A DNA stretch of 64,000 nt, from NCBI RefSeq assembly GCF_036588685.1, contig NC_086380.1, forward strand, positions 55,118,001-55,182,000, written 5' to 3'. Below, piece after piece: positions 17,848 to 60,719 of this stretch. The stretch is from Mytilus trossulus (taxonomy: Eukaryota). Position 1 is the first letter of the stretch; the number at the start of each line of letters is the position of its first letter. Position numbers and translations under genes: made by a program. The notes below the pieces were generated by a model. The model ran no database searches and was not told where the DNA came from. It was given only the letters and a program-made list of their open reading frames with translations.

Positions 17848-17908
17848 ATGAAAGTGTTTTCTGTTTACAGCATGTTACTTGTCTTGTATATTCATAGTCG
17901 TGATAGTG
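17848..17908 (+). CDS. Paralog 1 exon 1 (signal peptide)
   Basis: Reads MKVFSVYSMLLVLYIHSRDS then G|gtaagt. Hydrophobic core; phase 1 matches the acceptor at 20473. Confidence 0.75.
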
Positions 17909-19281
17909 GTAAGTTTTCTTTTATATCAGATGAATTAATCCCAAAGGATGAATCTACATGTGATTTATTAAATAAATCAAGATGAAAACATTGATCAATT
18001 TGACGACAAATTAATATTTGGCGTAAAATATGAACTATTTTCATTAAGTTTTTTGTTAGTGGGATTGTGAAGTTTGTGTTTATATTTTATGCCTTTTTAT
18101 ATGTTTGATGCAAACAACATTATTGTTATACTTCAAAGTTTGGATATTTATATTGTTTGGTAAACAAATTTGTTCATTGCAGATTGTCAAGATTCCAACA
18201 AAACAAATCCTCTGAGAAAAATGTTCATTTGTCGTTTGTAATAGGTTTATGTTAAAACAGAAAGTTATGATTTTGCAAATAAAAAGATTTTTCTTTATAA
18301 TGTGTATATAATTTAAAACTATTTCAAATTAGTAATTACAAAACAAATAACTATGTCATTAGAAAATCTTTTGATACTATAACTGTTCTCCTTGTGAATT
18401 TTACATTATAGCTGTTTTTTTAAAAGTTTGTATTAGAGATTACAAATATCATAAAGGAGTGGATTTCGAATGAGGATTTATCGTGCGTCATTTTTTGCGA
18501 ATCTGTTTTGTATTGTCCTGAATTTATGACTACTAATGTATAAACTCAGTAAAGATCCATCAAATCAACATCTAATACAAAACTTTAATAAGACATGCAA
18601 ATAATTGCATTTGAAATGGCTCTCACTGATGACGAATTCGGTATTCACATTAAAGAGATGTATACTGCTAAATCAACTTTAAATAAACCTGATTTTAAGA
18701 ATGATTACTGGTAAGAGATTATTTGTTTTGTATATTTTCCAATTGTTAATTGTCAATTTTTAGATGATGACGTTTCTTTGTTACAATCATTTAGTTTGAT
18801 TGTTCGATTAGGTTGTGTATTTGAAATATTTATCATTGTTTATGATTTGAACAACTTAATTTCTGTATTACTTAAACATTATAAAACATCATGGTTTTTC
18901 AATACCACAAAAGTGTAACATAAGATACCAAAGAAACAGTCAAACTTAATTACTTGGTCTTAATGTTTACATCTTTTTAAAATTTAAAATTTTGTTGGCA
19001 AAGCACAATATGTCGGCATATTACCTGCAACTCATCACACTTGCTTATTCTTTTTTGGTTTGCTTTTCAATTTTCATGAGGTTTTAATTGAAAAGTAACT
19101 TCACAAAAGTACTGAACGATGAAATTTTAAAAGGAAATATTCTAGATCAAATGACAAAATCAAATGCTTAAACACACCAAGCGAACAAAAAACTATTGCA
19201 ATACAAATAAATGGGAGAAACATTAGGACAGAAACACACACAAATGATTGCTAACAAAAGTTTCAAGATTTAATTTGATTA

Positions 19282-19323
19282 CGCAAGAAATGCGTTTCGT
19301 CCATACACGACTAACCAGTGACG
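19282..19323 (-). ncRNA. Degenerate hammerhead motif
   Basis: Reads CGUCA-CUGGUUA-GUCG..GGAC-GAAACGCAUUUC-UUGCG. Confidence 0.55.
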
Positions 19324-19574
19324 CTCAGATCTAAAAAGTTTGAAAGTCAAAACAAGTACAACGTCAAAGGGGACTAATAATTCCAAAAAGGTTGTAACAA
19401 ATACGGCTATGTTCCTGCCTTGGATTAAAAACATCATTATTCTTTAGAATAATAGATATTATTTTAGAAACATTTCAATGTGCTCTGGTCCCTTTTCCGT
19501 ATCTTTCATACTACCTTTTTTTTTAATTACAAAACGTTAGTACATTCAATTGGAACAATATCAAAGCGTATGAA

Positions 19575-20190
19575 TAATAAAGGCAACAGTAGTATACCGC
19601 TGTTCAAATCTCATAAATCCATGGACAAAAACAAAATCGGGGTTACAAACTAAAACCGAAGGAAACGCATTAAATATAAGAGGAGAACAACGACACAACA
19701 CCGAAACGCAACACACACAGAAATGGACCAGGCAACAGACAAAACATCACGAGAATAACACATATAGCATCAAAACCAAATACATGATTTTGGGATAGAC
19801 TAGTACCGTGCCACGTCTTATCTCAATACCTCAAAAATAAGAGAAAATACAAACGACTCAACGTTAAAATGCAACACACACAGAAACGAACAATATTATA
19901 ACAATGGCCATCTTCCTGACTTGGTACAGGACACTTTTAAAGGGGAATAAAAGTGGTGGGTTGAACCTGGTTTTATGGCATCCCAAACCTCGCACTTTAA
20001 TGGCAAAGTTAAATATAACATTGAAATGAGAACATAATATTACAGGACTACAATACAAATAAAAAGGAGAACATATTAGACAAAGAAAAGCATGATTAAT
20101 AGATAATAAAAAGCATCAGGTTTAAAATTCAATACGCCAAAAACGCGTCTTGTCCACACAAGACTCACCAGTGACGCCCAGATATGAAGT
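19575..20190. mobile_element. Dispersed repeat family D, ending in a hammerhead motif (other copies at 55705-56078, 12290-12640 rc)
   Basis: aaataaaggcaacagtagtataccgctgttcaaa... is near-identical at 19575 and 55705. Confidence 0.8.
20135..20176 (-). ncRNA. Degenerate hammerhead motif
   Basis: Reads CGUCA-CUGGUGA-GUCU..GGAC-AAGACGCGUUUU-UGGCG. Confidence 0.55.
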
Positions 20191-20473
20191 ATCGAAAGTG
20201 AAAAAGGACACATTTTAATTTCATTCTTTGTAGGCACTAGTATATAATACAGTACAAAGATTTCGTCAACATATTTTATATTAAAATAAATATATCATTT
20301 ATAGTTCCTAAATTATAATTGAATATTTTTTAGTGTTTATCAATAGCATAAGCTAAACGAAAATCAGTATATTTAGATAACTCATTCGTCGAATTTGCTC
20401 GAGCAAAATGAACACTAGAACACATTCTTTAAAGAATATCAAAAAAAGAAAATAACTATTTTTGTAATTCCAG

Positions 20474-20965
20474 TATATTGTACACATGAAGTATTAATAC
20501 AAACATTCAACAGTGGGAATATCGATGCTTATTCAACACCAGATGTTTTTGATTACTATACAAACCTGTCGGAATACTACTTGTTCCCGTCCCGAAACCA
20601 GTTGATGAGGTTTAGAGTGGCTTGTAATGATGCATTTATCCTCTTATCATCTGCAGTCAACCTACAGTCTCAAGACTTTTATGAAATTTGTATTGGTGGA
20701 TCAAACAACAAAGTGACAAATATCCGTCGTAAATACAACACTGGGAACGTTCACCAGATTAATACAATTGATATTTTAAACTGTACTGAACAAAGAACAC
20801 TGATCGTGAGATGGATGCTCAATGGAGAAATAACCCTTCTTAAAGAAACCACTGGCGGAATGGAAATAGTAATGAAATGGACAGATCCCAACCCAATACC
20901 CATACATGGTGTCGGAATCATGACTGGATGGGGAGCAGATGGACTTTGGACTTTAGAACATTCAT
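20474..20965 (+). CDS. Paralog 1 exon 2: farnesoic acid O-methyltransferase-like (Methyltransf_FA) domain
   Basis: Acceptor ttccag| and donor T|gtaag. Contains the Methyltransf_FA hallmarks ACNDAFILLS, FYEICIGG..N...IRR, ILNC.E and WTDPNPIPIHGVGIMTGWGADGLW. Confidence 0.9.
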
Positions 20966-21220
20966 GTAAGCTGATCCATTCAAAATAAGATTGCATTATT
21001 GATTCATAATGTATATAACAAAAATTGAAGAAAAAAAATATTCAAAGTGGAACATCAAAAATCAGTTTAATTTCGAATTCAAATGCTCTCACACTTCAAG
21101 CAAATGATTAAAAATGATTATAGTGAAGATCTATAAAACAAGAAATACAATGTAGTTGAATTTGTTTGACCAAAGAAATATTTGATGAGTTATCAAATGT
21201 ACTAGGTTATTAAGCTGATA

Positions 21221-21262
21221 CGCAAGACGCGCGTTTTGTGTGTATAACACTCCTCAGTGACG
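21221..21262 (-). ncRNA. Minimal type I hammerhead ribozyme motif (near intact) in a ~360-bp Penelope/retrozyme-like repeat (~21188..21550)
   Basis: Minus strand reads CGUCA-CUGAGGA-GUGU(UAUAC)ACAC-AAA-ACGC GCGU-C-UUGCG, with a palindromic stem III and one core change GAA>AAA. Confidence 0.7.
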
Positions 21263-21637
21263 CTCAGATTAAAATTGTAACAAAAAACAAGTACAAAATT
21301 GTGCTAAATAGGACTAAAATAATATATTTCCTTTCAATAACTGTGTAATTGCAGACGGAATATAGGAAAACTCAAGATTTCTCCCAATATATGCCAACAA
21401 TTTAAAAGTTGTGCTTCATAGGGCTCAAATGATATATGCCTGAGATACAAAACAATCCTAAGTATTTGGAATAATTCATAATTTAGCAAATAGAAAATAT
21501 AAAAGTAACCATAAAATTAATATATATGTCAACACCGAAGTACTGACTACACAATGTAAACCTAAACAAAAAAAGTATATGTGTAGTCATATTTTATCAA
21601 TGTCATTACTTTAAAGGTGTTCTGTTTTTTATTTCAG

Positions 21638-21867
21638 CTTTCCTTATTGGACGTTATTGTGGTATTCCTACAACATACGGTAAAATGGTGTTACTTTCTA
21701 CTTCAATTAGTCTCAGTCGAATGAATTGTTTGTTCGAATGTTCACTGAACCGTGATTGTCTTGGAATCAACTTTAATAAGAAAACGAATGAATGCGAGTT
21801 TGTGTCTGTTGGACAGATTATTCATAAGTTCAATCGTCAGAATTGGTCATTCTTTACAGAGTGTTAA
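21638..21867 (+). CDS. Paralog 1 exon 3: PAN/Apple domain
   Basis: Acceptor tttcag|. Reads RYCG...CLFECSLNRDCLGINFNKKTNECE...WSFFTEC*: C-x3-C-x5-C...C core plus flanking Cys. Confidence 0.88.
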
Positions 21868-27545: not shown

Positions 27546-30035
27546 CAAAACAAATATATGAAATACTGTTTAGATCTGATGAATACAAAATTTAAAAACA
27601 ATGTCCAGTATAGTTTTCTGTAGTTGCAAACTGATATGATGTAACTTTGTCAATATGACAATGTATTTAATTAACCTACTTTCATAAAAAGGTTTAAATA
27701 CCAAAAATATTTCAGACATTTAAAAATCCTATTTACATGTACCTTGTAGAATTATGTTTTTTTTTTGCTTATATGCCTGGCTTCAACCATGTGTGGTTGA
27801 GTACATGCTGATGTTATGTTGTCAATTGGCCTGAGGTTTGCTTGTTAGAGAACAACAACATGGCTGGCATGAGTCATTGCAAAGATTTTTTTTAATTCAG
27901 AAAGCAAATCAGTTTCAACCTAATGCATTATAATTAAATTAAGTCTCCATCCCCACTGGTCGTTTCTGCGTATTTATACACCCAACACAGTCAGAAGACA
28001 CCTCACTCTCTATAGTGGGTTTTAATACTAATGGAACGATTGAAATCAAGGTAATTTAAACTTATTGGGAGGAGAAATAAAGTTTGTGTCATGCATATTT
28101 TTAATTTACATATGTGCAATTTCTTTGATTTGATCCTTTACAAATGTTCTTTAAATTAAATGTATTTACGGGAAAGGTTGCTGCTTTTAATTAATAAGTT
28201 TGTAATTTTGATGGTCACTGTTGTACTTCAAATATAAATCTATGCAACAGAGGTATCAAATGATTACCAGCAATTGCCATTGTAAATTTGGTCACATTTA
28301 TTTATCAATAATTTATCTAACTCAAATATATTGAGACATATTATATGTTTTTTCAATAAATTATCGATATCAAATGGAAGCAAAAGGACTTAAGATCCAG
28401 CTAAAATATTAAAAACCGCCACATTCTGTATGTACGTACCTGTCCCAAGTCAGGAGCCTGTTATTCAGTATAGTTGTCGTTTGTCTATGACATACATGTT
28501 TGAATTTGTTCATTTTGTACACAAATTAGGTCGTTAGTTTTCTCGTTTAATTACATTGTCTTTTCAATGCCCTTTATAGCTTTCTATGCCGCGGTACATG
28601 CTTTGCTCATTATTGAAGGCTATACAGTGACCTATAGTTTTTAATTTCTGTGTCTCTTAACTTAGTTGGGAGAGTTATCTCATTGGCAATCATACCACAT
28701 CTTCCTTTTTATAATAAATATTTTTACAATTTTTGAACTACAAATCAAATAAAAAAAATAATTCTATTAATAATTAAAGGGCCCTTCGGTACATATTAAT
28801 TACAAACAAGAAAATAATAATAAAAAAAAAATACTTCTTAATATTAAATTGTTATTTGACAATTTACATAATTATATTCTTTTCTCTGATTTGCCTAGCA
28901 AATAATATAAACATTACGCCTTCTGTCATCTATTATATAATGCAGTTCATTGGGAATTATATTATGGTAGTTAACAAATATATGGAACTATATAGCTTTA
29001 ATTGTCCTGCCGACTCTGAATAAAGCTATTTTTATTTATTATCCCGCAAAGTGCCTCAATAGTTTTACCTGGAAAGGGAATTAACCCATATGTCTGAATT
29101 GCAAACCAACAGAAATTCTACACTGTCGATAATAGTTATCCTCGAGTGATTGCGAGTGAGTGATTATCAGTGTGAAGAGTATAATACTATATTTTTCTTC
29201 GTGAAGAAATTGAAACACAGTATTAAATAGAAAATAATTGTTAATCACCGATATCAAAGTTGTAAAATAGGAAGGCACTTCTACGGAGCGCCGATTTTAT
29301 AATTCCAATGAGAAAATATTTCATGTGGTTTGTAACGTCGTGAACGTTCACGGCTATCTTTTTTCTCCTTTTTTTAGACGAAACATACCATCTTTACCAG
29401 GGTCGCGCCTTGCTCATGTAGAATAGATCAACACATATCCAACATGATTTTACGGAGAAAATATTCTGGATTTTGGAAAAGTATGGATCCCCCCGTTATT
29501 TTTAGAAATAACACTTATTTTTGGCAAAAACATTAATAAAATGTCGTAAATATCTATAATTCCTTACCTTCTTCTACAATTTTACTCGAGATACTTACAA
29601 AATCAGATTCCTGGTTTATTTCTGCATTTGTGTGTCAATTTTCGTTGTCTGTTTACCTTTCTATAAATAGCGCGAGGAACGGAAAGGGTTAGCATTTGTC
29701 TGTCTCGATAGCTGAAAACTGACGTTTACGGCAACTCTTATCGTAGTTCAAAGATTTACTGCAAGCTAATATACACGTTGAAATATAAGATTATTACTGA
29801 AAAAAAGTCGAGTACACCTTTAACGGATATAGACGTATATTTTGCTTGTCCTGTTTTGAAGTTATATTTTTCTATTGGATTTGGATATTACCAGCCGGAA
29901 TAGTTAAAAACGCTTTCATAACAGTAATGTAAGTTTTATTACTGACATTTTTGCAAAAATAATGCCTTAATTTGATATTTGAGTGAACTTTACTTCTTCA
30001 TGTGTAAATATTGAGGTACGAAGAGGGATATTGTA

Positions 30036-30932
30036 ATGGAGAAATTACCAAAACCATTAGTTGCGCTTATTAACAGTATTGTAGACGAATATGAACATTT
30101 TAATTGGAATTCGAATTACTTAGGTGATAAAATGAGAATTTCGTTGATTTGGACCAGAGGTGAATATGTGAATACAAACAAAGGTGTAAAACACAAGTCG
30201 AAATCAAGTAAAGCCAGGGACACTAAACGGTTAAAAACGTGGCAAGATAAGAAAGAAAATTTACATAACGACGATGATATAGATACTAGTGATATAGATA
30301 CTGATAGTTCAGAGGAAGATATGAGCGAATCAAGTGATGAAAATCAACAAATCGACAAGGTAGATATCCCGCTGGTAACCCCCGAAAAAGTAAACATTAG
30401 ACCGGTTACGAAAATTACTCACCCGGTACGAGTGTCTATTAATAAGTCAATCAATAAAAACAATCATGAATCGCCACCAGAAAAAAGAGTGTGTCGTTGT
30501 TCGATATATGGAACGAGTGTGGAAGTTCAAAAACAAAGTGTACACACAAATATAAAGGAATGTGAACATGTAGAAATAGATGACGAAATAAAAACAGTCG
30601 CATCCAAATCGATAATAACCGGGAACAGTCCATGTAATGACAGCCACTATCAGAAAATAGTGTTTAATAGACGACCAGAAGGTGATATCGTGTTAGGAAA
30701 AATTAAAAAGAGAGATACATTAGTTATTTGTAATACAACAAAGAAGAAAATATATCATGTGAATCTTGATACGAACAAATCAGGTTATGAAGACACAATG
30801 TATTATATTAATAGATATAAAGATTTGAGAAAAACGGACGATGAAGAAATAAGTAGTTATGTTTTTCATGTTCCGAAATTAGAAAGATACGCGGAAGTTC
30901 ACAAACTTTGTCCGTGGTGTTTTTTGGAATGA
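30036..30932 (+). CDS. Intronless 298-aa protein of unknown function inside a poly(A)-tailed retroposed unit
   Basis: Longest ORF in an AT-rich window. Compact N-terminal region with a basic segment (KHKSKSSKARDTKR), an acidic tract, a linker, and a C-terminus ending HKLCPWC. No RT, endonuclease or transposase motif seen. Confidence 0.75.
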   Translation: MEKLPKPLVALINSIVDEYEHFNWNSNYLGDKMRISLIWTRGEYVNTNKGVKHKSKSSKARDTKRLKTWQDKKENLHNDDDIDTSDIDTDSSEEDMSESSDENQQIDKVDIPLVTPEKVNIRPVTKITHPVRVSINKSINKNNHESPPEKRVCRCSIYGTSVEVQKQSVHTNIKECEHVEIDDEIKTVASKSIITGNSPCNDSHYQKIVFNRRPEGDIVLGKIKKRDTLVICNTTKKKIYHVNLDTNKSGYEDTMYYINRYKDLRKTDDEEISSYVFHVPKLERYAEVHKLCPWCFLE

Positions 30933-31260
30933 ACAGTTATTTGGGGAAAAACCAAGATCCGTTTCATGCGTGAATTAACTCTTTAATTATATTGTTTATT
31001 ATGTATCAAAACTTAGGTTTGGAAACCAACCTATTTTTGTTAGGACTTAAAAATATTAGTTAAATATAACATTTGCGTATGCTAACATTTTGTGTATTTT
31101 TTTCTTGTAATAGTTCAAAGGCTATTTTATTGTTTTATATATAAAAAAGAAAATTTAAAAAAAAGGAAGTATATTCATACAATTAGTTTATCATAGGATA
31201 GATTGATTAAAAAAGTGACATTAATATAATCAGTTTGGTATATGAGAATTTGATGACTTA

Positions 31261-31357
31261 GAGTAAATGAGCGATTTGTTGAGTTGAGTAAATGAGCGAT
31301 TTGTTGAATTGAGTAAATGAGCGAGCTGTTGACTTAGAGTAAATGAGCGATTTGTTG
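31261..31357. repeat. 25-26 bp tandem repeat x4 (GAGTAAATGAGCGATTTGTTGA...) in the 3' UTR of the retroposed unit
   Basis: Units start at 31261, 31286, 31311 and 31337. Confidence 0.9.
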
Positions 31358-34300
31358 TTGTTGTTTTTTTCTTTTCAGGGAAAATGACAATAATTGACAT
31401 AAATGTTTGATATATGTGTAATTGTAATCTGTGATATGTATATAGAAGTGAAATTATAATAAAGATAAAAAAAAGGAAATTTAAAAAAAAAAAAAAAAAA
31501 ATAAAAAAAAAAAAAAAAAAAAAAATATTATTACTGAATTAAAAAGCGCAGATACTGTAGTTTCTCAAGCTATTTTTATTTATTTTTTACAGTGAGGGAA
31601 AAGTTGTTTATTTTGCAGTTACAAAAACGTTGCAAATGCGAAAAATGCATTGCGGCAGATATAGGTTTTTCAACGTGACGTTCCTACAGAGTCCCTACTT
31701 TTATATCCCATCAGGAAATTGAACTTTAGTTTATTTGGCAAACTTTTGACAGTACGCACAGTACTTGAGAGCTAGTTCAAAGCCACTTTCAACTTATAAC
31801 AGAATCCTGCATCTGAGACTTACTAATTAATCAGTACATATAAAAAAGCCAATGAATTGATTATAAAGAAGGCAAAACAATCATATGCAAACAGGACCTT
31901 GTGCAATGTCGAATACAGGTATCGACATATGGTAGATCCAGGAATGTCTCTCTCCATCCAAATAACAATTTATAAAACTAAACAATTATAGGTCAATGTA
32001 CGCATTCAACACGAAACCGTCGATAACAAAGAACAAACAGCTATTAAGGGCCCCAAAATCACTAGTGTAAACCCTTTCAAACGGGAAAACCAATGGTCTA
32101 ATATATATATAAAAAAAAAGAGACGAGAAGCACGTATGAATAACATAAACAAACGAAAAACTACTGTTAATCAGATTCCTGACTTCGGACAAGTGCAAAC
32201 ATTTACAGCGGGATTGCACGTTATTATAATGGTACCATACCTTGTCGCTTTTTCCGAATCAATAGTATAACATCACCACATAGAAAAACACACGATAAAA
32301 TATTAATTGGAAGGCTTAACTCAATCAAGAAACATAAATTAACCCATTATGAACGAATAAATTTGATCTGCGATACCTCAATGCAAATATATAGTTAAAA
32401 AAAAATATTCAGGACAAACATTTAAGGCCAAAAAGCAAACAAATCCAAACAAAGCAATAGCAATACACCATCGCGAAATATAAATACCTTACAAAATATT
32501 CACTATTGAAAAACAAATGGTTTCAAGATATTTTAAAGTAAATGAACAAACAATGTCGGTTTATGTATACAACTTCTGTGTTTATATCCAGAATTTATTT
32601 TTATCATCCCGCATAGTATCCAAAGTTTTAATTTCTTGTGTCTCAAGACCCCCACCTACTTACCATGGTGACGGTCATCATTCTAAAATGACATGTGAAC
32701 GTTCAATTGCAAGAGCCTGGCGCACCCCAAAGAACTAAACAAATAAATGAAAATAAAGTTTTGTTTAGTCGAAAAAGATGTTATGTATTCTGCTTCTTTA
32801 ATTTGCCTTTTTTATAATAAAAAATAACAGAAGTGACATCAAACTTTGGCCATAGCAAAAGTCAACTATCTTGTCATTTTTTAAAATGTTATATTTCTTT
32901 TAAAAAATAAAAACAGCAATCTTGATATTCATGAGCTTCACAAGAATAAGTATGCAAAGTTTTTCAGAGTTCAATAAATGTTAACGGGGTGTGCCAATGT
33001 GAATTATCATATGGATAAATGGTATTCAAATACTTAAGCCGCGACATTTAACACTGCATTGATGTAGATCGTTTATTCCCTTTTTCGATATAAAAATGAT
33101 GGGAGAGAAATAATCGACATTTTGATAGTTTTGTACTAGAAGTAGACATATTAAGGACATTAAATAATGTTATTATTTTCATTGTTATACTTGAGATGTT
33201 TATAAATCTTTAAAGAACCACCGTGTATAGTCTTTGAAGAGGAAAGGAGGGGGCACTATTACGTAATACGTTGTAAGAGCTATCGTAAGCCAATGTTCAC
33301 TTCTAACTGCACATATGCGTATATTCAAAATTTAGGGTATCTTTGACGAGTCCATACTTATATGAGCCGATAGCTAATACAATTTTCTTGTTTACTAATT
33401 TGAATTTGATTATCATTGGGTTTTAACGACTTGAACATTACCACGGTTTGGGATAGTAAAATAACGAGATGATCATAGACGACGAACCAGTATTTCTAAA
33501 ATTCCTGATAGGCAAAAAACACTAGTGCTTGAAATTAAAAGTATGAAACAACTTCTTTCAAACTCATGTTTCATAAGAATTATTAATCTGCTCAGTCCAG
33601 TTAAAGTTTTTTCAATGTTTTTATTTTTAAACATTTTATTTAGTTCACTGAATTGTCAGGATCAGAAACTGTCACATTACAGGTGTGAATGGGTCTTTTT
33701 TAAACTTTACCAGCTGTTAAAACGAATTTCTAGAGCTTGTTCATTTGTTAAACATACAAGACCTGTTGGTGACCTTCTGCTGTTTTTTTTTTCTTTCTTT
33801 GGTCGGGTTGTTGTCTCTTTGACACATTACCCATTTCCATACTCAATGTTATCCTTTATTAGTTATAGTCTTTAGTATAAAACAGTAAATACTCATAGAA
33901 AAAGTCATTACAAAAAAAGAAATTTCGTTTTTTTTTTAACTATTTGTTTATTCAATAAAGATGTATACATGAGAAAGCCTTGGTTTCATAATGTGTATTA
34001 TTTGCCTATCAAATACAAACATGTCTATTTCAAAATTTCAATGAAACAAATGAAATTTTTTCATCCATTTCAATTAGGTTTCTACAATTAAAACCAAAAA
34101 CATTGCATATAACTGATAATCCTTATCACAATGCAAACAATACTTTCTTGCTGGTTTCCATGGTCCATAATAAATATAGACAAATATCACCCTGCTGGTT
34201 TTCATATAATAATGTTGTATTTTTTTATTCCTAAACTTGTCTTTTAAATTATTTATGTTGCATGCAAAAAATATTCCTATATTCATGTAAAATGTGGTGA

Positions 34301-37300: not shown

Positions 37301-39268
37301 ATTTATTTTGTTTACATACTGGTTCCCAATTATGCTCTCTGAGATCCATTTCACAGAAACATAACATGGGAATGTTACCAATAAGTAAACATGTGTATAT
37401 TGTTTACTTTGAAATTGATGGTAATCTGAGAAGTTCAAGGCATATAAACGTTGAAAATATGCCGCACAGCCTTATATTTTGACCTTTGAAAAACATTGGG
37501 GTGCATATGAACTTTCAATTCTAGTTTAAGATTTTTTTGCAATACTTCTTAGTAAAAGAAGTACAGTTTCAGCTGAAAATCGAGTTCTTATTGGAAGCGC
37601 AGGGTCAATATTTACTGACATGCAATCCTTTCCTGGTAGCCTATGCACTGCCTGGAACATACGCTCCTTTGGTATCTCGAGAGTTTTTTTTAAAGAAAAA
37701 CCGGACATAATCATCAATCGTGTTTATCAACTGTGTTTTCAACAAATTTAAAAAAAGACGGAGAGTAGAAAAACACCACTTCATGCAATCGCCATGTTAC
37801 CGGAAGTCATTATACTGCTAATTAGGTTTGAGATATGCTCTTAGTGCGTTGAAGATCTATTTTTACTTAATTATGGAAATCTTAACTATGCTGTTATTTA
37901 AATTTACATCGGTAAGTGCAAATAGATATTCAACACAACAAGAGCATATCTCAAATCAGACAGCTTTCTAATCAACAATACCGAATAATAGTTCAACGAA
38001 GGGACGCCGTAATCAGTTTTATTCACGAGAGAGACCCATGTAAATTAATGAGAAAGATGTAAGGACAAAACTCATCGATTATAAGTAGTATGACTTATTT
38101 CAATTGAGTTTATCAATCAGACAATCTGACAATACGGAAGAGGTAGATGATTTATGCAAATAATTGCGGCAGAAGTTATATTTTACCAAGGCATTAAATT
38201 CACGTTCAGGATTATAGACTGATAGTTTTGTTGACAACAAAGAGTTTTTTTCCTTAAAAACACAAAACGTGGTACTTTTTTATTGGAAATATCACGAATG
38301 ACAACATATTGAGTTGTTATGCATACACTTGTTCCCACTGACATCAGTATTGTATTACAGAAAATGAAGAAAAAATTAAGAAAATCAAAGTATTGATCGT
38401 GGGCTTAATTTTTTTGTACTGCATACGATATTATTTGGTGAATGTATCATCGCAACGATTGACATCTTTTCTCAAAAATTAAAAATATGTAAAGTCTCTG
38501 AATGATTGCATAATAAAAACTATAAGACAAATTTCCATACGTTTCGGCCTTTACGGCCTTTTTCATTGGAATAATTACAACATTGAACCAACAATTACAT
38601 CGCTTGGATACAATAACTTCTATGACGTTCATTTGCCGCGTTTTTCGCTTTTTTTATATAAATATATTTTCTAACAGGGGCTTGTTATTTGCTCTGTTTG
38701 CTTGTTTTAGCGACAATATATGAATGACAATACTTATTTGTTCTTTCTTTCAGAATAATCGGTTATAGATATGAAAACAACACTGATATTCAATCGATCA
38801 ACTTCAAATTCAAATTATTGCAAATTATTACTTGAAAGGTATTATTAAAGATTTAAGTATAATGTTATCAACTGGTTATTAGCATAAGTATAGATTTGAA
38901 AATTAAAGCTATGTCACACTATGAAACGATAAGTTATATACATAGTTAAAAGTTCAAACGTTCAGGTGTGTTTCTGTAGTGTCAAAAGAAGAAAATATTA
39001 AAAGTAATAATTAAATAGATGCGTTTTTTTGAATTTATATTTTATATGGATATATATTTTTTTTTTACAATAGGATAATACTTTTTACATCTCATTTGTA
39101 TACATTGAAAACAAAACATAAGAGCCATCAATTAAATTTGTATTGGGAATATTCGATTTTTTCGTCATGGTAACAACTGCTTATGAAAAATAAATAGTTC
39201 TTATAGAACGAATATGCATGGTTACGAATAGATTGTTTTTTCTAGAAAGAGAAATGTTCAAGTTTCAA

Positions 39269-39320
39269 ATGACTGCTTATTTTGTTTCGATCAAGTTACT
39301 TCTGTTGTTTATTTATAGTG
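39269..39320 (+). CDS. Paralog 2 exon 1 (signal peptide)
   Basis: Reads MTAYFVSIKLLLLFIYS then G|gtaagt; same atagtg|gtaagtttt junction as paralog 1. Confidence 0.75.
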
Positions 39321-40751: not shown

Positions 40752-41246
40752 CAAATGGTGCAGATGCAATATTAATACAAACCTTTAACAGTGGTAATAT
40801 TGATGCTGATTCAACACCAGATGTTTTTAATTATTACACAAATCTGTCCGAATACCACTTGTATCCGTCACAGAACAAGATGTTCAGGTTTGGAGTCGAA
40901 GCTTGTCATGATGCATTCATTCTGCTATCATCTGTAGTCAATCTACAGTCGCAAGACTTTTATGAAATTTGTATCGGTGGAACAGATAACACAGCGTCCA
41001 GCTTTCGTCGGAAGTACAACACTGGGAACACTCTTTTTATTTTTACACCAGAAATTTTAAACTGCACTGAAAAACGGACAATAACTTTGAAATGGACATT
41101 CAACGGAGAACTAACACTTCTTAAAGAAACTAATGGCGGAACGGAAGTAGTAATGACATGGACAGATCCCAACCCAATACCTATACATGGTGTCGGAATC
41201 ATGACTGGATGGGGAGCCGACGGACTTTGGACTATAGAATATCCGT
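40752..41246 (+). CDS. Paralog 2 exon 2: Methyltransf_FA domain
   Basis: Acceptor ttccag| and donor T|gtaag. Motifs FGVEACHDAFILLS, FYEICIGG and WTDPNPIPIHGVGIMTGWGADGLW. Confidence 0.9.
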
Positions 41247-42112: not shown

Positions 42113-42342
42113 CTTTCCTTATCGGACGTTTCTGTGGTATACCTACTACATATGGTAATATGATGTTACTTTCAACCTCAATTAAACGCAGTAGAATCAT
42201 TTGCGTGTCCATATGTTCTCCGAACCGTGCTTGCCTTGGAGTCAACTTTAATAAGGAAACACATGATTGCGAGCTTGTGTCTGGTGGACAGATAATCCAA
42301 ACCATCGGTCGTCAGGATTGGTCATTCTATACAAAATGTTAA
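42113..42342 (+). CDS. Paralog 2 exon 3: PAN/Apple domain
   Basis: Acceptor tttttag|, 230 nt as in paralog 1. Reads RFCG...CVSICSPNRACLGVNFNKETHDCE...WSFYTKC*. Confidence 0.88.
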
Positions 42343-44999: not shown

Positions 45000-45057
45000 A
45001 TGACGAAGAATATTGTTTTTATAATAGTTATCGTGTTTCATGTATATGCATATGGTG
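45000..45057 (+). CDS. Paralog 3 exon 1 (signal peptide)
   Basis: Reads MTKNIVFIIVIVFHVYAYG then G|gtaagt; classic n/h/c signal peptide ending A-Y-G. Confidence 0.8.
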
Positions 45058-46097: not shown

Positions 46098-47589
46098 GTC
46101 TTGGGTTGGAATCATATTTGTAGAGGTATAGTGGCTAGCATGCTAGCCTCATATTTGACTGATCGGGTTTTTATTCCTGCTCAGGTCTAACCAAAGAGGT
46201 TAATCATTCGCTTATATTAGCAAATAGTATATGGGATCAGAAAATATACAGGGTGGCTGGGAGAAATGGGAAATCTCACTTTTAAAGTTGGTCTACTAAT
46301 AATAAATCATAGAAATTTTGGTTAAAATGAATTTTACTTATTTTGGAATTTTAGGAGAAACAAATTGGAGTCACTGATGGGGTTAATAAGTAGGATCCAA
46401 TTTATGTTATCAAATATACTAGTAACTCGTTTTTGTCATATCACACCTTAGAAATTGCTCACAACACCAAGTCATGTAATACGCTTCTTTTCCACTCAGG
46501 ACCAAGTTGGGACCAATCGGTTTTATTTTTTGCCTATCATGTTGCAGAAGGTTAATATTGTAGGCACAAGAAAATTACTGATATTGTGTATTTTTATTAC
46601 ATAGCAGGTTCATCTCAAGCCGCTGAATAAAAGAAAAGTATCGCTACTTGATCATGTTGATATAACGAAACAAAATGCTTATAATTGAATGGTACTTTCA
46701 AAATGTCAAAAACAGTAATAAATCAAGACATTTTAATTATCGCACAAAGCTTTTCCGGCGTACGTATTGTAGTTCCGAACACTGGTTAGCTCATCTATGG
46801 ACCAAGATCATCTTATCCTTTAGCCCTCTTGTTCGCATTGATTTACATAATTTGGTAACCTCCACACCCAATGATTGAAACTGTTTGGGACTTGAATCTT
46901 TCGTTTTATTTTATTTCCGTTTCTTTGTTCGAATGACACTTTTAGCTACGAACCATTTTCTGCTCCTGCCTGCATTTCATTTAAAGCCTTTTGTTTTTTG
47001 CCTTTTTCGTTCTTAGCCATGGCGTTGTCAGTTAGTTTTAGATTTATGAGTTTGACTGTCCGTTGGGTATCTTTAGTCCCTCTTTTATGCGTTCAATGTA
47101 TATGTTACAACGTCTTTTGATTGAGTGAAGCCATTCAAATTGATATTTGATAATGCATCTTTCTAAGTTGTGATGTTATACTATTGTTTCATGTTATAAA
47201 GACGGTTTAGTATATTCAAAAGGTGTAATTCAGCAATATGATGTTCAGTTGTTGTCGTTTGTTGGTGTTGTTTATAAATGTTTCTCATTTCTCGGTTTTT
47301 TATATTGATTAGACAGTTTGATTTACCTATTAAAAGGATTTACACTAGTAATGTTTTGGAGCCCTTTATATCTTGCTTTTTGGTGTGAACCAAGGCTCCG
47401 TGTTGAAGACAGTACATTGACTTTTACCTTTACTGTGACGTAAATTTAGAATTGTCTCACTTGCACTTATAACACATCTTCCTATGCGTGTATATTATAC
47501 ATTATAATTATCGAACACTAATTGTGCATCTACTTATTTCATAGTATTTTTGAAAACCGTTCTTACACATTAAGAGTTTTTAATTGTAG

Positions 47590-48072
47590 ATGAAATTCGA
47601 ATCAGAACCCTGAACGCGGGAAACACTGATTCGAATACGAATCAACATATTTTTGAGGACTACACAAGCCTATCCGATTACCATATTTTTCCCTCAGAAA
47701 AAGAGTTCGTCAGGTTTACCATTGAAACTTGTCATGACGCCTTTATTCTTTTATCTGCTGCAATTGACCTTGAGTCACATGACTTTTATGAAATATGTCT
47801 CGGTGGATCAAATAATCAAGAGACATATATACGTCGAAAATATAATGATGCTAACCCATTCAAGATTTCAACACCTGACATTTTGGGCTGCACAGGGAAA
47901 AGCACATTTGAAATAAGATGGTCAAAGGAAGGAACAATACATCTCGCCAAAGAGTCAGCAGTTGGGATGGAAACAATAATAGACATGAAAGATTCTACCC
48001 CATTACTCATTCAGGGGGTCGGGATCATGACTGCATGGGGATCCGACGGCATTTGGATTTTTGAATCTGCGA
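47590..48072 (+). CDS. Paralog 3 exon 2: Methyltransf_FA domain
   Basis: Acceptor ttgtag| and donor A|gtaagt. Open frame DEIRIRTLNAGN...FTIETCHDAFILLS...FYEICLGG...GVGIMTAWGSDGIW; the ORF track captured only the last 65 aa. Confidence 0.9.
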
Positions 48073-48515
48073 GTAAGTAAACCAATCTTATGTTTTCTTA
48101 TCAACTGAATGTTGTGTATGACAAATTATGCAAATTATTAAATGTGTCTTAAAAACGAGATAAAGTAATTTAATGTAGTGCATTTGAGTATGTTGGATGA
48201 ATAGATAATACACTGAAATTAAAAAGAAAATGAAACGTTTCGTTCGCTGTATAGATACTACACTGAAAATAAAAAGGAAACGATAAGTCAAATCATCTTC
48301 ATCTTACTTATTTGACGTTGGAATGTAGTCGGTAATATTCTCACATATTGATTGGTTGATTGATTAGCAAAGCTACTTTCGTTCTGTTTGTATAATAAAT
48401 AATATTCAAGATAAAATATGTACCAGAATTATTAAGAAACTGAGACTGTCAGTGGTTCTATCATTAGGGCGTATAGTCTGAAGTGTTTTAATTTTTAGAA
48501 CGTATTTAAAACTTT

Positions 48516-48517
<2 letters not shown>

Positions 48518-48546
<29 letters not shown>
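48518..48546. repeat. (TA)n microsatellite
   Basis: Read directly from the sequence. Confidence 0.95.
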
Positions 48547-48552
<6 letters not shown>

Positions 48553-49108
48553 TCGACAATGATTAAAACCCGATTAACATAGAAAGCCACAAAATCCCTA
48601 CTATGAAAAAGATTTTTTTTTTAAATCATGCGAACAATCTGACGGCCTGATTTATGTAGAAAAAAAACAAACGAAAAACAACATGATTAGTAAATACTCA
48701 TACAATCTATTGTTAACGTCCATTTTATAATCAACATGTGAATGATTTTTCAACAAGTTATTCGTCAAGTTCATTTGCTAACCCAATAAACATTATATGA
48801 GAAAGACGCATATACCTGGATAACATAAAATGCCTTCTATTCATCAGAACTTTGACAAACAGATTTAAATGATTATTTCAACCAACATGTTTGTTATCTT
48901 CAAATTATAGATTGTCGCAAAACGATCGACACAAGCTCATTGCAGCCTTTTTCTTAACACAATATTAATTAGTTAGATGAAATTCCTCGCCGTTGTTATT
49001 CCTTTTTAGCATCGAAACACTTTCAGAAGTAAACACATATTAAAGCATATACATAAAAAATTACTGTAAGTATTTAATTCTAACGTGGTCTATTTTTGTA
49101 TCCTCTAG

Positions 49109-49338
49109 AAATGTTTGGCGGACTTTTTTGTGGAGTTCCTTCAACGTTCGGTAGTATGAACTTACTTCCGATATCAGTAAAGCGCAGCAGAATTGCATGT
49201 TTGTTTAAATGTTCACCAAATAGTGCTTGTCATGGAGTCCACTTTAATGAGGAAACCAATGAATGTGAACGTGTGTCTGTAGGACAAGTCATCGATCAGT
49301 CCACCCGTTCCGGTTGGTCATTATATACAAAATGTTGA
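49109..49338 (+). CDS. Paralog 3 exon 3: PAN/Apple domain
   Basis: Acceptor ctctag|, 230 nt. Reads LFCG...CLFKCSPNSACHGVHFNEETNECE...WSLYTKC*. Confidence 0.88.
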
Positions 49339-56410: not shown

Positions 56411-56469
56411 GGATCCTCAATGCACTTGAAAATTTGTACTTGTTTGGCTTCATAATATTTTGATATGAA

Positions 56470-57272: not shown

Positions 57273-57681
57273 GAGTTAAGTCTGCCAATTGATATTTTCT
57301 CGTATGTTTTTCTATGTTGTGATGTTATGCTATTGTTTCAGAAAAAGGGAGAAGGTTTGGGCCCATTAAAACGTTTAATCCCGCTGCAAATGTTTGCACC
57401 TGTCCTAAGTCAGGAATCTGATGTACAGTAGTTGTCGTTTGTTTATGTAATATATACGTGTTTCTGGTTTCTCGTTTTGTTTATATAGATTAGACCGTTG
57501 GTTTTCCCGTTTGAATGGTTTTACACTAGTAATTTTGGGGCCCTTTATAGCTTGTTGTTCGGTGTGAGCCAATGCTCCGTGTTGAAGGCCGTACTTTAAC
57601 CTATAATGGTTTAATTTTTAAATTGTTATTTGGATGGAGAGTTGTCTCATTGGCACTTACACCACACCTTCCTATATCTAT
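57273..57681 (-). mobile_element. Dispersed repeat family A, young inverted copy (others at 901, 25857, 31945, 47100 rc, 49870)
   Basis: Near-identical reverse complement of 53408..53820. Confidence 0.85.
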
Positions 57682-57849
57682 CTTCAGTTAAACATTTTTT
57701 TTAATAGGAGTTTGTGTATCATCAGTTGGTTTTATGTTCATAATTTAATTCATGATTTTAGGTTGCTATAAAGTTTCAAAGTATTTTGTTTACCATAATC
57801 GGATGTTCCCTCGTAGTTAGGTAAAATATGCGAATGCAAACTCGGTTTA

Positions 57850-58260
57850 GATGATCCGGAAGGGTAAACAGATACTGCTCCACATGAGGCACCCGTCATG
57901 TTGCTTAAGTGATATCGAATCCGGTAAACGGTGACCTATAGTTGTTAATATTTGTGTCATTTTGGTCTTTTGTGGACAGTTGTCTCATTGGAAATCATAC
58001 CACGTCTTCTTTTTATTATTATTCGGAAGTTTATTCATGAAAAGGAAATGGATTGTAGTTACGACGTAATGAGCATATTTCATAACATTTGTGAAACGGT
58101 TATTCCATAATCATTCGTGATGGGGTCCGTAAAATGTACGAAGGGATGATTTCAACTTCACCATTTGGAACTCTTGGTTTAATAGATAGATTCCTTGTGA
58201 GCAGCAACCCTCAATCAAGATAAATCATGATAGGAAATGCAAGCACGGGAATATCGTATT
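57850..58260 (-). mobile_element. Penelope-like RT C-terminal fragment in intron 1 of the pseudogene
   Basis: Minus strand gives a decayed IRYSRACISYHD...LLLTR...LNQEFQMVKLKSSL, contiguous with the family B tail. Confidence 0.65.
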
Positions 58261-60719
58261 ATTTTGACTTCTGGTTATTTAAAATGGTTTTACATCTGAC
58301 GATGTTTCTTTTGAATTGTAGACGAAATTCGAATTGAAACCTTGAATAGTGGAAAAACTGAATCGTTTAAAAAAACAAATGGTTTTGATGACTTCACCAG
58401 TCTATCGGACTACAGTGTTTTCCCTCAGTAAAAAACCTTCTTCAGGTTTGAAATTGAAGCTTGTCATGACGCCTTTATTTTTTTGTCTTCTGCCATTATT
58501 CTGAAGTCACATCACTTTTATGAAATTTGTATCGGTGAATCAAGTAACAAACTCATCTTTGCGTCGAAAGTATAATGATGTTAACCATCTTATTATGTCA
58601 AGACCTGATATTTGAGGCTGTACGGAGAAAAGCACATTTGAGATACGATGGAAACTTGACGGAACAATACACCTTGTCAAAGTCTCTGCCGTTGGAACAG
58701 AAACAGGGATAGAAGGGACAGTTTTTATTCAAGTACTTATACAGGGAGTAGTAATAATGACTGGATGGGGATCTGATGAAATTTGGATTATTGAACTTTC
58801 AAGTAAGTGAACCAATATAAAACGTTTTCCATAATTGAACCTAATTTGTACACGTGTAATGTGCAGTTATCAAAATGGGAAACATACTCATCAGAAGATC
58901 AAAGATAGACGAAAAAATAGGCCGCAACGTTAAATCGGAATAGAAACGTTAAATCAATTACAATTAATTTCATATGGCTATGAAAATTAGCATTCGTACT
59001 ATTTGATGCTAGAAGCATAACTTTATACCGATCATTCTTATATAAGTAGGATTTTCAAAAACTTAGACTTATATAGCTCTATAATCACGAGCTCGGGTAT
59101 TAATCATTCAGCTTTCACAACATGTATAAGATAAACTTAATTTCAAAATTTACACTACCGTTGTTACCAAAGAAGTTATCAATTCTAAGTATGGAAAAAT
59201 CATTCCTTTAAAGGACTGCATTGACATTCCTTAAATCAAAGATTATAGTCTTGTTTAGATGCTTATAAACGCCTTTAATCTATATGTTATTTCAACTTAT
59301 CAATCATTTTGAAGTTGTAGTCAATAACCGTTTTTTCAGAACATCAGAAAATAGATAGTTCGTCAATTTCTAAAAAAATGTTTAATCTTCTTTTCCTGAA
59401 AGTATAAAAAAAAATAGCCTTTTTTTTTAAATGAATATCAGGTTTGATAAGTTACATACTATTAGCTGCGACATTTTTTATTTGAGAGAAACGATTATTA
59501 CATGGAATATTCAGCTCAGCTTACAATTGTACATGTCCATGTGAAGTAAGGAAATAATATGTGATTGTCATTGAGATAAATGTATACCAAAGACAAAATT
59601 GTGTACACGCTTGTGACTAAAAGTCACCATACCTATAACAATTAGCAATCAAAAATAACATACAAAGCCATATAAAGCCCAACAATGACCAAATAAGAAA
59701 CAATTTAGACGAGAAACAAGCGGCCTGATTTATGTAACAAATAAAAAACGAAAAACAACATACATTTTACTCAATGAACTCTCATTCAATTGTGTTACTT
59801 ACATATCATTATTAACACGTATTTTAGGTTTCAATTTGGTGTTTTCACAACTTCATGATACATTATAAAAATAAACATGACACTTCCAACTATAATGCAT
59901 CCTAAATTGAACAAAAGTTCTTGATTTTTTTACAAACATATTTACCGTCATCAATGTATATGTTGTCACCAATTGAATAACAAAAGTTTTTGTCTGCTTC
60001 TTTTTCGTCGAATTTCATAAATAATATTATAAGGAAATTATCGATCTCAAAAAAGAGGAAGTAAATAAAACTGACAACATCAACAGTAATATGAGGCAGG
60101 AATTACCTGTGAATGGGGACGAAGTCTATGTTTTTTTTTAAATCAACAATGTTAAAGAGAAAAACGGAAATACCGTAAAGTTTCCGATTTTGGTTCTGTT
60201 GTTAGGGATTTTAGTTTTGACGTTATTTAAGTTATGTCGTCATATTCAATGTAAACAAAGACACGCTGTCATCATGTAACGTTATTTTAATAACAAACAA
60301 TTTTTTTTAAACGAATTAGTATTAGTTCCTTTTTCATACATTTTATTCAAAGTCTCATGTAAACAAGACCGGAAACGGAAGTAGATTTCTGCGCCGATCC
60401 GGAAATTCAAAAACTCGACAAAAAAAAAATTGAACGATTTTGAGTTGATTAGTACAATGAAAAATTCAGGAAATTTTCCCGATTTTTTTGTTTTTTTATT
60501 ATTGAATTTTTTTACTGTCAACTCAAAATCGTTCAATTTTTTTTTTGTAATAAATCAACGGACTGAGTGATTCATTACTTCTTCTTCGTCGTACTTTCTT
60601 TTCTATTTTTATTTTTTGTATAAAACAAACTATAAAAAATGTATTTGTATTCATAAAACACATCATCCCTTTTAAATTAAACTTGTGTATGTTTTCTTTT
60701 TTTTTTGCTTTGTGGCACC

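What the first reader, a model, noticed from the sequence alone, without database searches (positions are those of the whole stretch)
17848..58802. Tandem birth-and-death array of secreted FAMeT-like + PAN/Apple proteins
Seen: three intact genes and one pseudogene on the same strand, with identical exon-per-module architecture (signal peptide | Methyltransf_FA | PAN), phase-1 introns and a 230-nt last exon ending in a terminal Cys. Paralogs 1 and 2 form one subgroup, 3 and 4 another. Known: Methyltransf_FA also occurs as an extracellular module (e.g. CPAMD8), and PAN/Apple domains mediate protein or carbohydrate binding. Inference: secretion and the lack of an evident SAM-binding Rossmann motif argue against a methyltransferase. 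This looks like a diversified two-domain recognition (lectin/immune or shell-matrix) family that automatic annotation would mislabel.
Basis: partly seen in the sequence, partly recalled or inferred. Interest (0 to 1): 0.8.

Follow-up and report, generated by a model that had tools for sequence, protein, structure and literature searches.

The report
Mussel secreted lectin-like plus apple-domain genes
Three intact genes and one dead remnant in a mussel genome encode small, probably secreted proteins made of a lectin-shaped module misnamed a methyltransferase plus an apple domain, and they belong to a very large, poorly studied gene family.

Summary
Three 3-exon genes lie on the + strand (17848-21867, 39254-42342, 45000-49338). 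Each has a hydrophobic N-terminal exon, a Methyltransf_FA exon and a 230-nt PAN exon. All six introns are GT-AG and phase 1. A lone, broken Methyltransf_FA exon lies at 58322-58802. Paralogs 1-2 and 3-4 form two subgroups.

The window is one copy of a block duplicated at least four to six times inside a 2.8-Mb supercluster. The genome holds at least 151 Methyltransf_FA exon matches, and 70 of the 150 listed have a PAN exon just downstream.

The module folds with high confidence (pLDDT 95.7) as an all-beta sandwich. It is closest to CBM66, galectins and GH16/legume-lectin folds (Z about 12). It has no Rossmann fold and no SAM motif. Coding sequence is under purifying selection (dN/dS 0.25-0.36), with no sign of diversifying selection in a crude test.

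Four RNA runs gave no reads on gene 2 or on gene 3 exon 1, so expression, secretion and ligand remain untested. RefSeq names a Mytilus edulis homolog CPAMD8, the predicted mislabel. First readers of this scan had flagged similar clusters elsewhere in this genome. Best reading: non-enzymatic secreted binding proteins, either shell-matrix or immune.

The parts
17848..17908 (+). gene 1 exon 1: ATG plus a hydrophobic signal-peptide-like stretch, phase-1 GTAAGT donor
   Evidence: Seven copies exist in the genome, and 7 of 7 keep the ATG and the open frame. Maximum 10-residue Kyte-Doolittle mean is 2.28.
20474..20965 (+). gene 1 exon 2: Methyltransf_FA module (492 nt)
   Evidence: Pfam PF12248, E 4.6e-25. 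AF2 pLDDT 95.7, all-beta. Fold searches.
21638..21867 (+). gene 1 exon 3: PAN/apple module, 230 nt, terminal Cys then TAA
   Evidence: Pfam PAN_1, E 1.1e-5. Six invariant Cys. Borders.
39254..39320 (+). gene 2 exon 1: signal-peptide-like, phase-1 donor
   Evidence: By my own eye comparison, 12 of 22 residues match the N-terminus of the M. edulis model P0001.
40752..41246 (+). gene 2 exon 2: Methyltransf_FA module (495 nt)
   Evidence: Pfam E 4.6e-26. Borders.
42113..42342 (+). gene 2 exon 3: PAN/apple module, 230 nt
   Evidence: Pfam PAN_1, E 6.4e-5.
45000..45057 (+). gene 3 exon 1: signal-peptide-like, phase-1 donor
   Evidence: Eight copies exist in the genome, and 7 of 8 are open. Maximum Kyte-Doolittle mean is 3.30.
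47590..48072 (+). gene 3 exon 2: Methyltransf_FA module (483 nt)
   Evidence: Pfam E 1.2e-20. Borders.
49109..49338 (+). gene 3 exon 3: PAN/apple module, 230 nt, stop TGA
   Evidence: Pfam PAN_1, E 2.1e-4 and 21.5 bits against a cut-off of 21.4.
58322..58802 (+). gene 4 relic: a lone, broken Methyltransf_FA exon (in-frame TAA, 2-nt deletion) with no PAN exon or first exon found
   Evidence: The 2-nt deletion is shared with its twin at C8:55.655 Mb.

Best explanation
These are three working members, plus one dead remnant, of a mussel (Mytilus-type) gene family encoding proteins of about 260 residues, probably secreted. Each protein has a cleavable N-terminal signal, one concanavalin-A/galectin-like beta-sandwich (the Pfam 'Methyltransf_FA' module) and one six-cysteine PAN/apple domain that ends the protein.

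The proteins most likely act outside the cell as non-enzymatic binding proteins. The beta-sandwich and the apple domain would each hold a glycan or protein ligand, in the mantle or shell matrix or on microbes.

The family grows by unequal crossing-over or segmental duplication of single genes and of whole four-gene blocks, and it loses copies by frameshifts and stops.

Shown: gene structure, domains, fold class, family size, block duplication, purifying selection, pseudogene fraction. Inferred: secretion, lack of catalysis, ligand binding, tissue and role.
For: - Gene models have canonical phase-1 GT-AG introns and frames divisible by three.
- Pfam confirms both domains (PAN_1 in 23 of 25 paralog exons).
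- The all-beta model has pLDDT 95.7 and pTM 0.91. VIA-align gives Z 12.0 to CBM66 and 11.9-11.3 to galectins. All 50 listed rows are lectin, CBM or glycosidase-type beta-sandwiches. Foldseek gives 38 matches at E<=0.001, led by GH16 and a legume-lectin-like domain.
- No SAM motif and no GH16 catalytic motif is present.
- dN/dS is 0.25-0.36 between types, so the sequences are constrained as coding sequence.
- Full-length annotated homologs with the same N-terminus, junction residues and C-terminus exist in M. edulis, coruscus, galloprovincialis and trossulus.
- Other family members carry a transmembrane tail in place of PAN (P0045, P0105), which puts the module outside the cell.
- Among 72 multidomain relatives the partner domains are DM9 (11), PAN_1 (4), F5/8-C, CUB, C-type lectin, fibrinogen-C, SUEL lectin, Sushi and EGF.
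- Passages read in papers: FaMeT-domain genes rise in M. edulis mantle during shell repair (PMC8194122). A signal-peptide plus methyltransf_FA protein occurs in abalone shell matrix (PMC6003135). FAMeT domains occur in secreted sea-star adhesive proteins (PMC9382459). [quoted passage not shown]
Against: - Four RNA-seq runs of the species label that best holds the DNA gave zero depth on gene 2's three exons and on gene 3's exon 1. The runs were read at 6-33% of each run, tissues were unknown, and the stretch held no expressed control gene. All reads fell on interspersed repeats.
- All close relatives in the protein collection are genome-annotation models, none from transcripts.
- No signal-peptide predictor was run.
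- The PAN exon alone folded poorly (pLDDT 43.8), and its Pfam scores are only just above threshold.
- A shared fold does not show binding. No galectin Pfam match appeared at E<=0.1, and no sugar-binding residues were identified.
- No diversifying selection was seen.
Confidence: 0.6

Rival explanations
1. Shell-matrix or biomineralisation proteins. They would be secreted by the mantle, bind chitin, matrix or mineral, and be induced during shell repair.
For: Passages read: FaMeT-domain genes are upregulated in repairing M. edulis mantle (PMC8194122). Abalone shell-matrix protein UP5 has a signal peptide plus methyltransf_FA (PMC6003135). The carbohydrate-binding-module-like fold would suit chitin or matrix glycans.
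Against: Whether the upregulated genes belong to this FAMeT+PAN subfamily is unknown, because the gene lists are in supplements that I did not open. No RNA was seen on gene 2. No acidic or repetitive matrix-type sequence is present.
Confidence: 0.3
2. Immune pattern-recognition lectins. They would be a large, variable, presence/absence-polymorphic repertoire that binds microbial glycans.
For: - Galectin-like fold, Z 11-12.
- Partner domains in relatives are lectin and immune modules: DM9, C-type lectin, fibrinogen-C, SUEL.
- The only PDB sequence hits of the PAN profile, although not significant (E 0.18 and 0.88), are apicomplexan apple-domain proteins.
- The expansion is large: at least 151 exon matches, with 15 of 40 exons broken.
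- The best DNA runs hold only 0.21-0.36 of the locus's words. This fits high polymorphism but does not prove it.
Against: dN/dS is 0.25-0.36 and no window exceeds 0.72. There are no expression or challenge data and no binding-site residues.
Confidence: 0.25
3. Largely silent, decaying duplicates. The block would be a recently amplified segment whose genes are not expressed and are on the way to pseudogenes.
For: Zero RNA depth in four runs. 15 of 40 exons are broken and 2 more are truncated. Copies in different blocks are 97-99% identical, so low divergence limits the power of within-type dN/dS.
Against: Between-type dN/dS of 0.25-0.36, at dS of 0.5-1.3, shows long-term constraint. Splice sites, start and stop are intact in all three genes. 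7 of 7 g1-type and 7 of 8 g3-type first exons stay open.
Confidence: 0.1
4. An enzyme after all: a farnesoic-acid methyltransferase, or a GH16-like glycosidase or transglycosylase.
For: The Pfam family name. Foldseek's best hits are GH16 glucanases (E 4.7e-5, TM about 0.5).
Against: The fold is all-beta, with no SAM motif I and no GH16 ExDx(x)E motif. A passage read in PMC10015273 says methylation by FAMeT was never reliably shown and that the fly mutant has normal hormone levels. The domain is only 160 residues against about 210 for GH16.
Confidence: 0.05

Closest known systems
Arthropod FAMeT (putative farnesoic acid O-methyltransferase; PF12248 x2 or PF12248 + DM9/DUF3421)
   Same: The same Pfam module, at 74-92 bits.
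   Different: The arthropod proteins are described with two PF12248 modules, or PF12248 plus DUF3421 (PMC10015273, passages read). The mussel genes have one module, preceded by a signal-like exon and followed by a PAN domain.
CPAMD8 (alpha-2-macroglobulin family; the name RefSeq gives the M. edulis homolog XP_071128232.1)
   Same: CPAMD8 contains a Methyltransf_FA module as an extracellular domain (PMC9363628, passage read).
   Different: There is no A2M, thioester or Kazal domain. Each exon translation matched only Methyltransf_FA or PAN-type families. The protein is about 260 residues rather than well over 1000 (the CPAMD8 size is recalled).
Galectins, CBM66 and legume-lectin/GH16 beta-sandwiches (concanavalin-A-like fold)
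   Same: Fold class. VIA-align gives Z 12.0 to CBM66 and 11.9-11.3 to galectins, with 120-135 residues aligned at 2.7-3.6 A.
   Different: Sequence identity is 4-12%. There is no Gal-bind_lectin Pfam match, and sugar binding is untested.
Mollusc 'galectin + PAN' proteins (ESM Atlas clusters)
   Same: The same two-part layout, a lectin-type beta-sandwich followed by PAN_1, in Mollusca (scores 0.83-0.86, a lead only).
   Different: The first domain belongs to a different Pfam family. In this genome, by my own comparison of the coordinates in the two tables, none of the 24 galectin-exon matches lies beside a PAN exon of this type.
Secreted FAMeT-domain proteins of other marine invertebrates (abalone shell protein UP5; sea-star footprint proteins Sfp1/3/4a/5/7/8)
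   Same: The same module is used extracellularly in secreted matrix or adhesive material (PMC6003135, PMC9382459, passages read).
   Different: Different partner domains (EGF, hyalin, WAP, vWF) or none. No PAN domain is reported there.

Membership tests
Pfam PF12248 Methyltransf_FA | HMM score above the gathering cut-off (24.2 bits) | tested here: met
   88.4, 91.7 and 74.1 bits for g1-g3 exon 2.
PAN/apple domain (PF00024) | HMM score above the gathering cut-off (21.4 bits) | tested here: met
   25.6, 23.1 and 21.5 bits, which is marginal. 23 of 25 paralog exons match at E<=0.01, best 4.3e-7.
PAN/apple domain (PF00024) | Six conserved cysteines able to form three disulfides, the outer pair joining the first and last Cys (apple pattern, recalled) | tested here: inconclusive
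   C7, C30, C34 and C40 are invariant, and C52 and C75 nearly so, in 22-25 sequences. Pairing was not verified.
PAN/apple domain (PF00024) | PAN fold (helix packed on a beta-sheet) | tested here: inconclusive
   The AF2 model of the exon alone has pLDDT 43.8. No fold search was made on it.
SAM-dependent methyltransferase (functional FAMeT/JHAMT type) | Rossmann-like alpha/beta fold with a SAM-binding motif I | tested here: not met
   The model is all-beta. No methyltransferase appears among the 50 listed VIA rows or the listed Foldseek rows. No motif I is present.
SAM-dependent methyltransferase (functional FAMeT/JHAMT type) | Methylation of farnesoic acid in vitro | not testable with these tools
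   Needs a biochemical assay.
CPAMD8 / alpha-2-macroglobulin family | A2M, thioester and receptor-binding domains plus a Kazal domain | tested here: not met
   Pfam finds only Methyltransf_FA and PAN-type hits on the exons. The homolog P0001 is 263 aa.
Galectins (PF00337) | Gal-bind_lectin HMM match and the beta-galactoside-binding residues | tested here: not met
   No PF00337 hit at E<=0.1. The likeness is in fold only.
GH16 glycoside hydrolases | Catalytic ExDx(x)E motif | tested here: not met
   The motif is absent from g1-g3.
Secreted proteins | Cleavable N-terminal signal peptide | tested here: inconclusive
   Each first exon has a 10-residue hydrophobic core with Kyte-Doolittle mean 2.28-3.30. 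Homologs have like N-termini. No SignalP was available.

The most novel reading that the evidence does not exclude
The 'Methyltransf_FA' module may be a cryptic lectin domain of the galectin/concanavalin-A fold. Mytilus may have amplified it, paired with an apple domain, into a lineage-specific repertoire of more than 60 secreted two-headed receptors. These would sit in a segmentally duplicated, presence/absence-variable 2.8-Mb supercluster and serve as an innate recognition system parallel to the galectin-PAN proteins of other molluscs.
Probability: 0.2. Interest if true: 0.65.

Novelty: new variant of a known kind. Interest (0 to 1): 0.42.

Why it matters
The Methyltransf_FA module is widespread in animals. 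It occurs in arthropod FAMeT, vertebrate CPAMD8, mollusc shell proteins and sea-star glue, and its function is unknown. Its name sends annotators to hormone synthesis.

A confident beta-sandwich model close to galectins and carbohydrate-binding modules gives a testable alternative: the module binds a ligand. So do the partner domains found in relatives, which are nearly all extracellular lectin or adhesion modules.

The mussel family is small (about 260 residues, two domains) and highly expanded, so it is a convenient system for finding that ligand. It also adds one more large, fast-turnover secreted family to the known gene-content variability of Mytilus genomes.

Against this, the domains, the architecture (database clusters already carry the name 'FAMeT/PAN domain-containing protein') and the extracellular use of the module are already on record. 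Expression of these particular copies is also unproven.

Tried and rejected
1. RNA support. One read-laying run on 39200-45199 with four RNA runs gave no depth on any exon. All reads fell at 41549-41918, 43409-43530 and 43871-43904, with loose ends. The first of these is a dispersed repeat of about 370 bp (2382 first-look candidates; 40 of 40 scored copies are 96-98% identical). This neither supports nor excludes expression.

2. PAN fold. AF2 on the exon alone, with 22 aligned rows, failed (pLDDT 43.8).

3. PDB by sequence. The Methyltransf_FA profile gave one chance-level hit (E 0.55). The PAN profile gave only E 0.18 and 0.88.

4. Positive selection. Nei-Gojobori dN/dS and 12-codon windows over four pairs showed none above 0.72. 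Column entropy is the same in strands and loops (1.01 against 1.00). Site models (codeml) were not run.

5. Galectin-PAN genes in this genome. By my own comparison of the coordinates in the two tables, none of the 24 galectin-exon matches lies beside a PAN exon of this type.

6. A fourth PAN exon and a first exon for gene 4 were not found.

The M. edulis locus, and the roughly 1-kb Logan contigs that carry the 267-aa relative P0046 and look like transcripts, could therefore not be inspected.

8. Literature. Six searches found no paper in the held library that describes a FAMeT+PAN family or a structure of the module. Subscription journals are not covered.

9. Supplements were not asked for. 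The gene lists of PMC8194122 may show whether this subfamily is the one induced in shell repair.

Everything was done exon by exon, and full-length comparisons used database proteins only.

Full report
**What is there.** The window is AT-rich animal DNA (GC 0.28-0.35) from contig C8 of a 1.30-Gb assembly, at C8:55118001-55182000. tblastn of the long open frames against the window shows four Methyltransf_FA-type exons and three PAN-type exons, all on the + strand.

Reading the borders gives three complete three-exon genes:
- g1: 17848-17908, 20474-20965, 21638-21867
- g2: 39254-39320, 40752-41246, 42113-42342
- g3: 45000-45057, 47590-48072, 49109-49338

All six introns have GTAAG donors and AG acceptors and are phase 1. 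The summed coding lengths are 783, 792 and 771 nt. Every last exon is 230 nt and ends with a Cys codon followed by the stop.

The fourth copy (58322-58802) is a single Methyltransf_FA exon of 481 nt with an in-frame TAA and a 2-nt deletion. nhmmer at maximum sensitivity finds no fourth PAN exon, and blastn finds no first exon for it, up to base 64000. The one refinement is that 'gene 4' is an exon relic.

**Domains.** Pfam scores the three intact middle exons at 88.4, 91.7 and 74.1 bits for PF12248 (cut-off 24.2). It scores the last exons at 25.6, 23.1 and 21.5 bits for PAN_1 (cut-off 21.4). The PAN assignment is thus marginal for a single sequence. However, 23 of 25 paralogous exons from this genome match PAN_1 at E<=0.01, and six cysteines are conserved. 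A PDB sequence search with the PAN profile gave only two non-significant hits (E 0.18 and 0.88), both to apicomplexan microneme proteins.

**The first exons.** Each first exon encodes 19-22 residues with a hydrophobic core (10-residue Kyte-Doolittle maxima 2.28, 2.65 and 3.30), directly before the module. The same layout is seen in annotated Mytilus homologs. The g2 first exon resembles the N-terminus of the M. edulis RefSeq model P0001; by my own eye comparison of the sequences, 12 of 22 residues match. In the genome the g1-type first exon occurs 7 times and all 7 keep the ATG and the frame. The g3-type first exon occurs 8 times and 7 keep them. I could not run a signal-peptide predictor, so secretion is an inference.

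**The wider family.**
- A six-frame search of the whole assembly with the g1 module gives 151 matches at E<=0.001. Of 213 first-look candidates, 150 were scored, so this is a lower bound.
- The PAN exon gives 79 matches.
- Of the 150 listed module matches, 70 have a PAN match within 8 kb downstream on the same strand, using 66 distinct PAN exons. Of these 70, 53 are on C8.
- A supercluster at C8:54.28-57.05 Mb holds 42 module matches. They are on the + strand up to 55.66 Mb and on the - strand from 56.17 Mb.

I fetched 36 loci. Of 40 module exons (4 from the window, 36 from the loci), 15 have at least one stop in their best frame, 2 more are truncated, and 23 are full-length and open.

The maximum-likelihood tree puts g1 in a clade of 7 and g2 in a clade of 7, and these are sisters (99/98). 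It puts g3 in a clade of 7 and g4 in a clade of 6, also sisters (100/100). Each window gene has twins 97-99% identical in other blocks, at about 54.28, 54.51 and 55.62-55.66 Mb, and inverted at 56.29-56.32 and 56.97-56.99 Mb. The four-gene block itself has therefore been copied several times. The g4 relic shares its 2-nt deletion with its twin at 55.655 Mb, so it was already dead before that duplication. Its TAA is private to the window copy.

'Tandem birth-and-death array' is apt, but the unit of birth here includes whole blocks. With 6-7 copies per type, haplotype duplication in the assembly cannot explain all of them. It could still explain some.

**A derived C-terminus.** In 24 of 32 PAN exons found in the fetched loci, the stop follows the last Cys directly. 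In 8 of 32, all in basal clades, a Leu codon stands there instead. Homologs such as P0004 and P0025 continue with a 12-residue Cys-containing tail.

**Relatives elsewhere.**
- The word-indexed search finds 16 proteins, all from Mytilus. The best is 72% identical.
- The exhaustive search finds 649 representatives at E<=0.001.
- Of ten representatives looked up, eight are named Mytilus models (edulis, galloprovincialis, coruscus, trossulus). One has only unnamed Logan records, and one is a five-module amphioxus protein. By the alignment, six of the eight Mytilus proteins and the Logan one have the module followed by PAN; the other two (P0045, P0105) end in a transmembrane tail.
- The Logan cluster, P0046 (267 aa), sits on contigs of 946-1087 nt. 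A three-exon gene cannot fit into that length with its introns, so these look like transcripts of a distant family member.
- RefSeq names the M. edulis homolog XP_071128232.1 'C3 and PZP-like alpha-2-macroglobulin domain-containing protein 8'. UniProt calls the others 'Farnesoic acid O-methyl transferase domain-containing protein'.

**Fold of the module.** With a 77-row alignment, AlphaFold2 gives pLDDT 95.7 and pTM 0.91 with twelve strands and only two short helical turns.
- Foldseek against the PDB gives 38 matches at E<=0.001, led by GH16 beta-glucanases. They include a legume-lectin-like domain, CBM40, CBM66 and PRY-SPRY domains, at TM about 0.5.
- VIA-align against 48,161 representative chains gives Z 12.0 for CBM66 and 11.9-11.3 for several galectins. 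It also lists the C-terminal domains of GH32 enzymes, the thrombospondin C-terminal domain and legume lectins. All 50 listed rows are beta-sandwiches of this class.
- Z 12 is above the tool's stated background of 7-8. Identities are only 4-12%, so this fixes the fold class, not a family.
- No methyltransferase appears in either list. The sequences carry neither SAM motif I nor the GH16 catalytic motif.

**Partner domains.** Among 72 multidomain relatives, the partners are DM9 (11), PAN_1 (4), F5/8 type C, CUB and C-type lectin (2 each), and fibrinogen-C, SUEL lectin, Sushi and EGF types. Only the first 25 of 45 families were shown to me.

The protein-language atlas lists two mollusc clusters with this architecture (64 and 74 members). 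As leads only (scores 0.83-0.86), it also lists mollusc 'galectin + PAN' clusters. In this genome, by my own comparison of the coordinates in the two tables, none of the 24 galectin-exon matches lies beside such a PAN exon.

**Selection.** Nei-Gojobori dN/dS is 0.27 for g1-g2 (dS 0.53), 0.26 and 0.35 for g1-g3 and g2-g3, and 0.05-0.52 for most pairs within a type. One pair reaches 1.26 and one has dS of zero, both on very few changes. Twelve-codon windows pooled over four pairs peak at 0.72. The stretch around the RRKYN motif is the most variable (0.42-0.71) but stays below 1. The genes are constrained as coding sequence. The crude test gives no support for diversifying selection.

**Expression.** The run search found no RNA holder. 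The best DNA runs hold only 0.36, 0.33 and 0.21 of the sampled words. Four RNA runs of the same species label, from four studies, were laid on 39200-45199 at 93% likeness. Depth on the exons of g2 and on exon 1 of g3 was 0, with 0.09 in one bin of one run. Hundreds of reads piled on 41549-41918 and two other short stretches, with loose ends. The first stretch is a dispersed repeat of about 370 bp. These reads show that RNA of this or a very close species was in the runs, but the stretch had no expressed control gene and the tissues are unknown. Expression of these copies is therefore unproven. This is the main weakness of every functional reading.

**Literature (passages read, not whole papers).**
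[quoted passage not shown] It describes the arthropod architectures.
- PMC8194122 reports FaMeT-domain genes upregulated in repairing M. edulis mantle.
- PMC6003135 lists abalone shell protein UP5 with a signal peptide and methyltransf_FA.
- PMC9382459 finds FAMeT domains in six secreted sea-star footprint proteins and calls their role unknown.
- PMC9363628 notes the module in CPAMD8.
- Six searches found no paper on a FAMeT+PAN family or on the structure of the module.

**Verdict.** Its positive claim, secreted recognition proteins, remains a reasonable inference without expression, secretion or binding data.

Full-length comparisons used database proteins.

Noticed in passing
window 41549-41918 (intron 2 of gene 2): A dispersed repeat of about 370 bp. 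There are 2382 first-look candidates in the genome, and 40 of 40 scored copies are 96-98% identical over the full length. It is heavily covered by RNA reads on both strands, with loose ends at both borders. It looks like a young SINE- or MITE-like element. The 81-aa ORF inside it has no Pfam match.
   Followed up: partly
window 43409-43530 and 43871-43904: Two further short stretches between genes 2 and 3 collect RNA reads with sharp borders and loose ends in all four runs. They are probably pieces of other repeats or of transcripts made elsewhere.
   Followed up: no
window 30036-30932 (+): A 298-aa ORF rich in acidic and Ser stretches lies between genes 1 and 2 and has no Pfam match at E<=0.1. 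Another first-reader note calls the surrounding 29787-31538 a retroposed unit.
   Followed up: partly
G000:C8:54.28-57.05 Mb: The supercluster has all copies on the + strand up to 55.66 Mb and all on the - strand from 56.17 Mb. This suggests a large inverted duplication of the whole array.
   Followed up: partly
L014, L015, L016, L017, L023, L030, L036, L007 (PAN exons): In 8 of 32 PAN exons a Leu codon replaces the stop after the last Cys. This matches homologs that carry a 12-residue C-terminal tail with two more Cys. The tail's role is unknown.
   Followed up: partly
P0045, P0105 (Mytilus coruscus proteins): Family members in which the Methyltransf_FA module is followed by a hydrophobic, transmembrane-like stretch and a short tail instead of PAN. 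These look like membrane-anchored versions of the module.
   Followed up: no
L040 (g1-type first exon at C8:54502326): The donor of this copy reads GC instead of GT. It may be a weak or dead splice site in an otherwise open copy.
   Followed up: no
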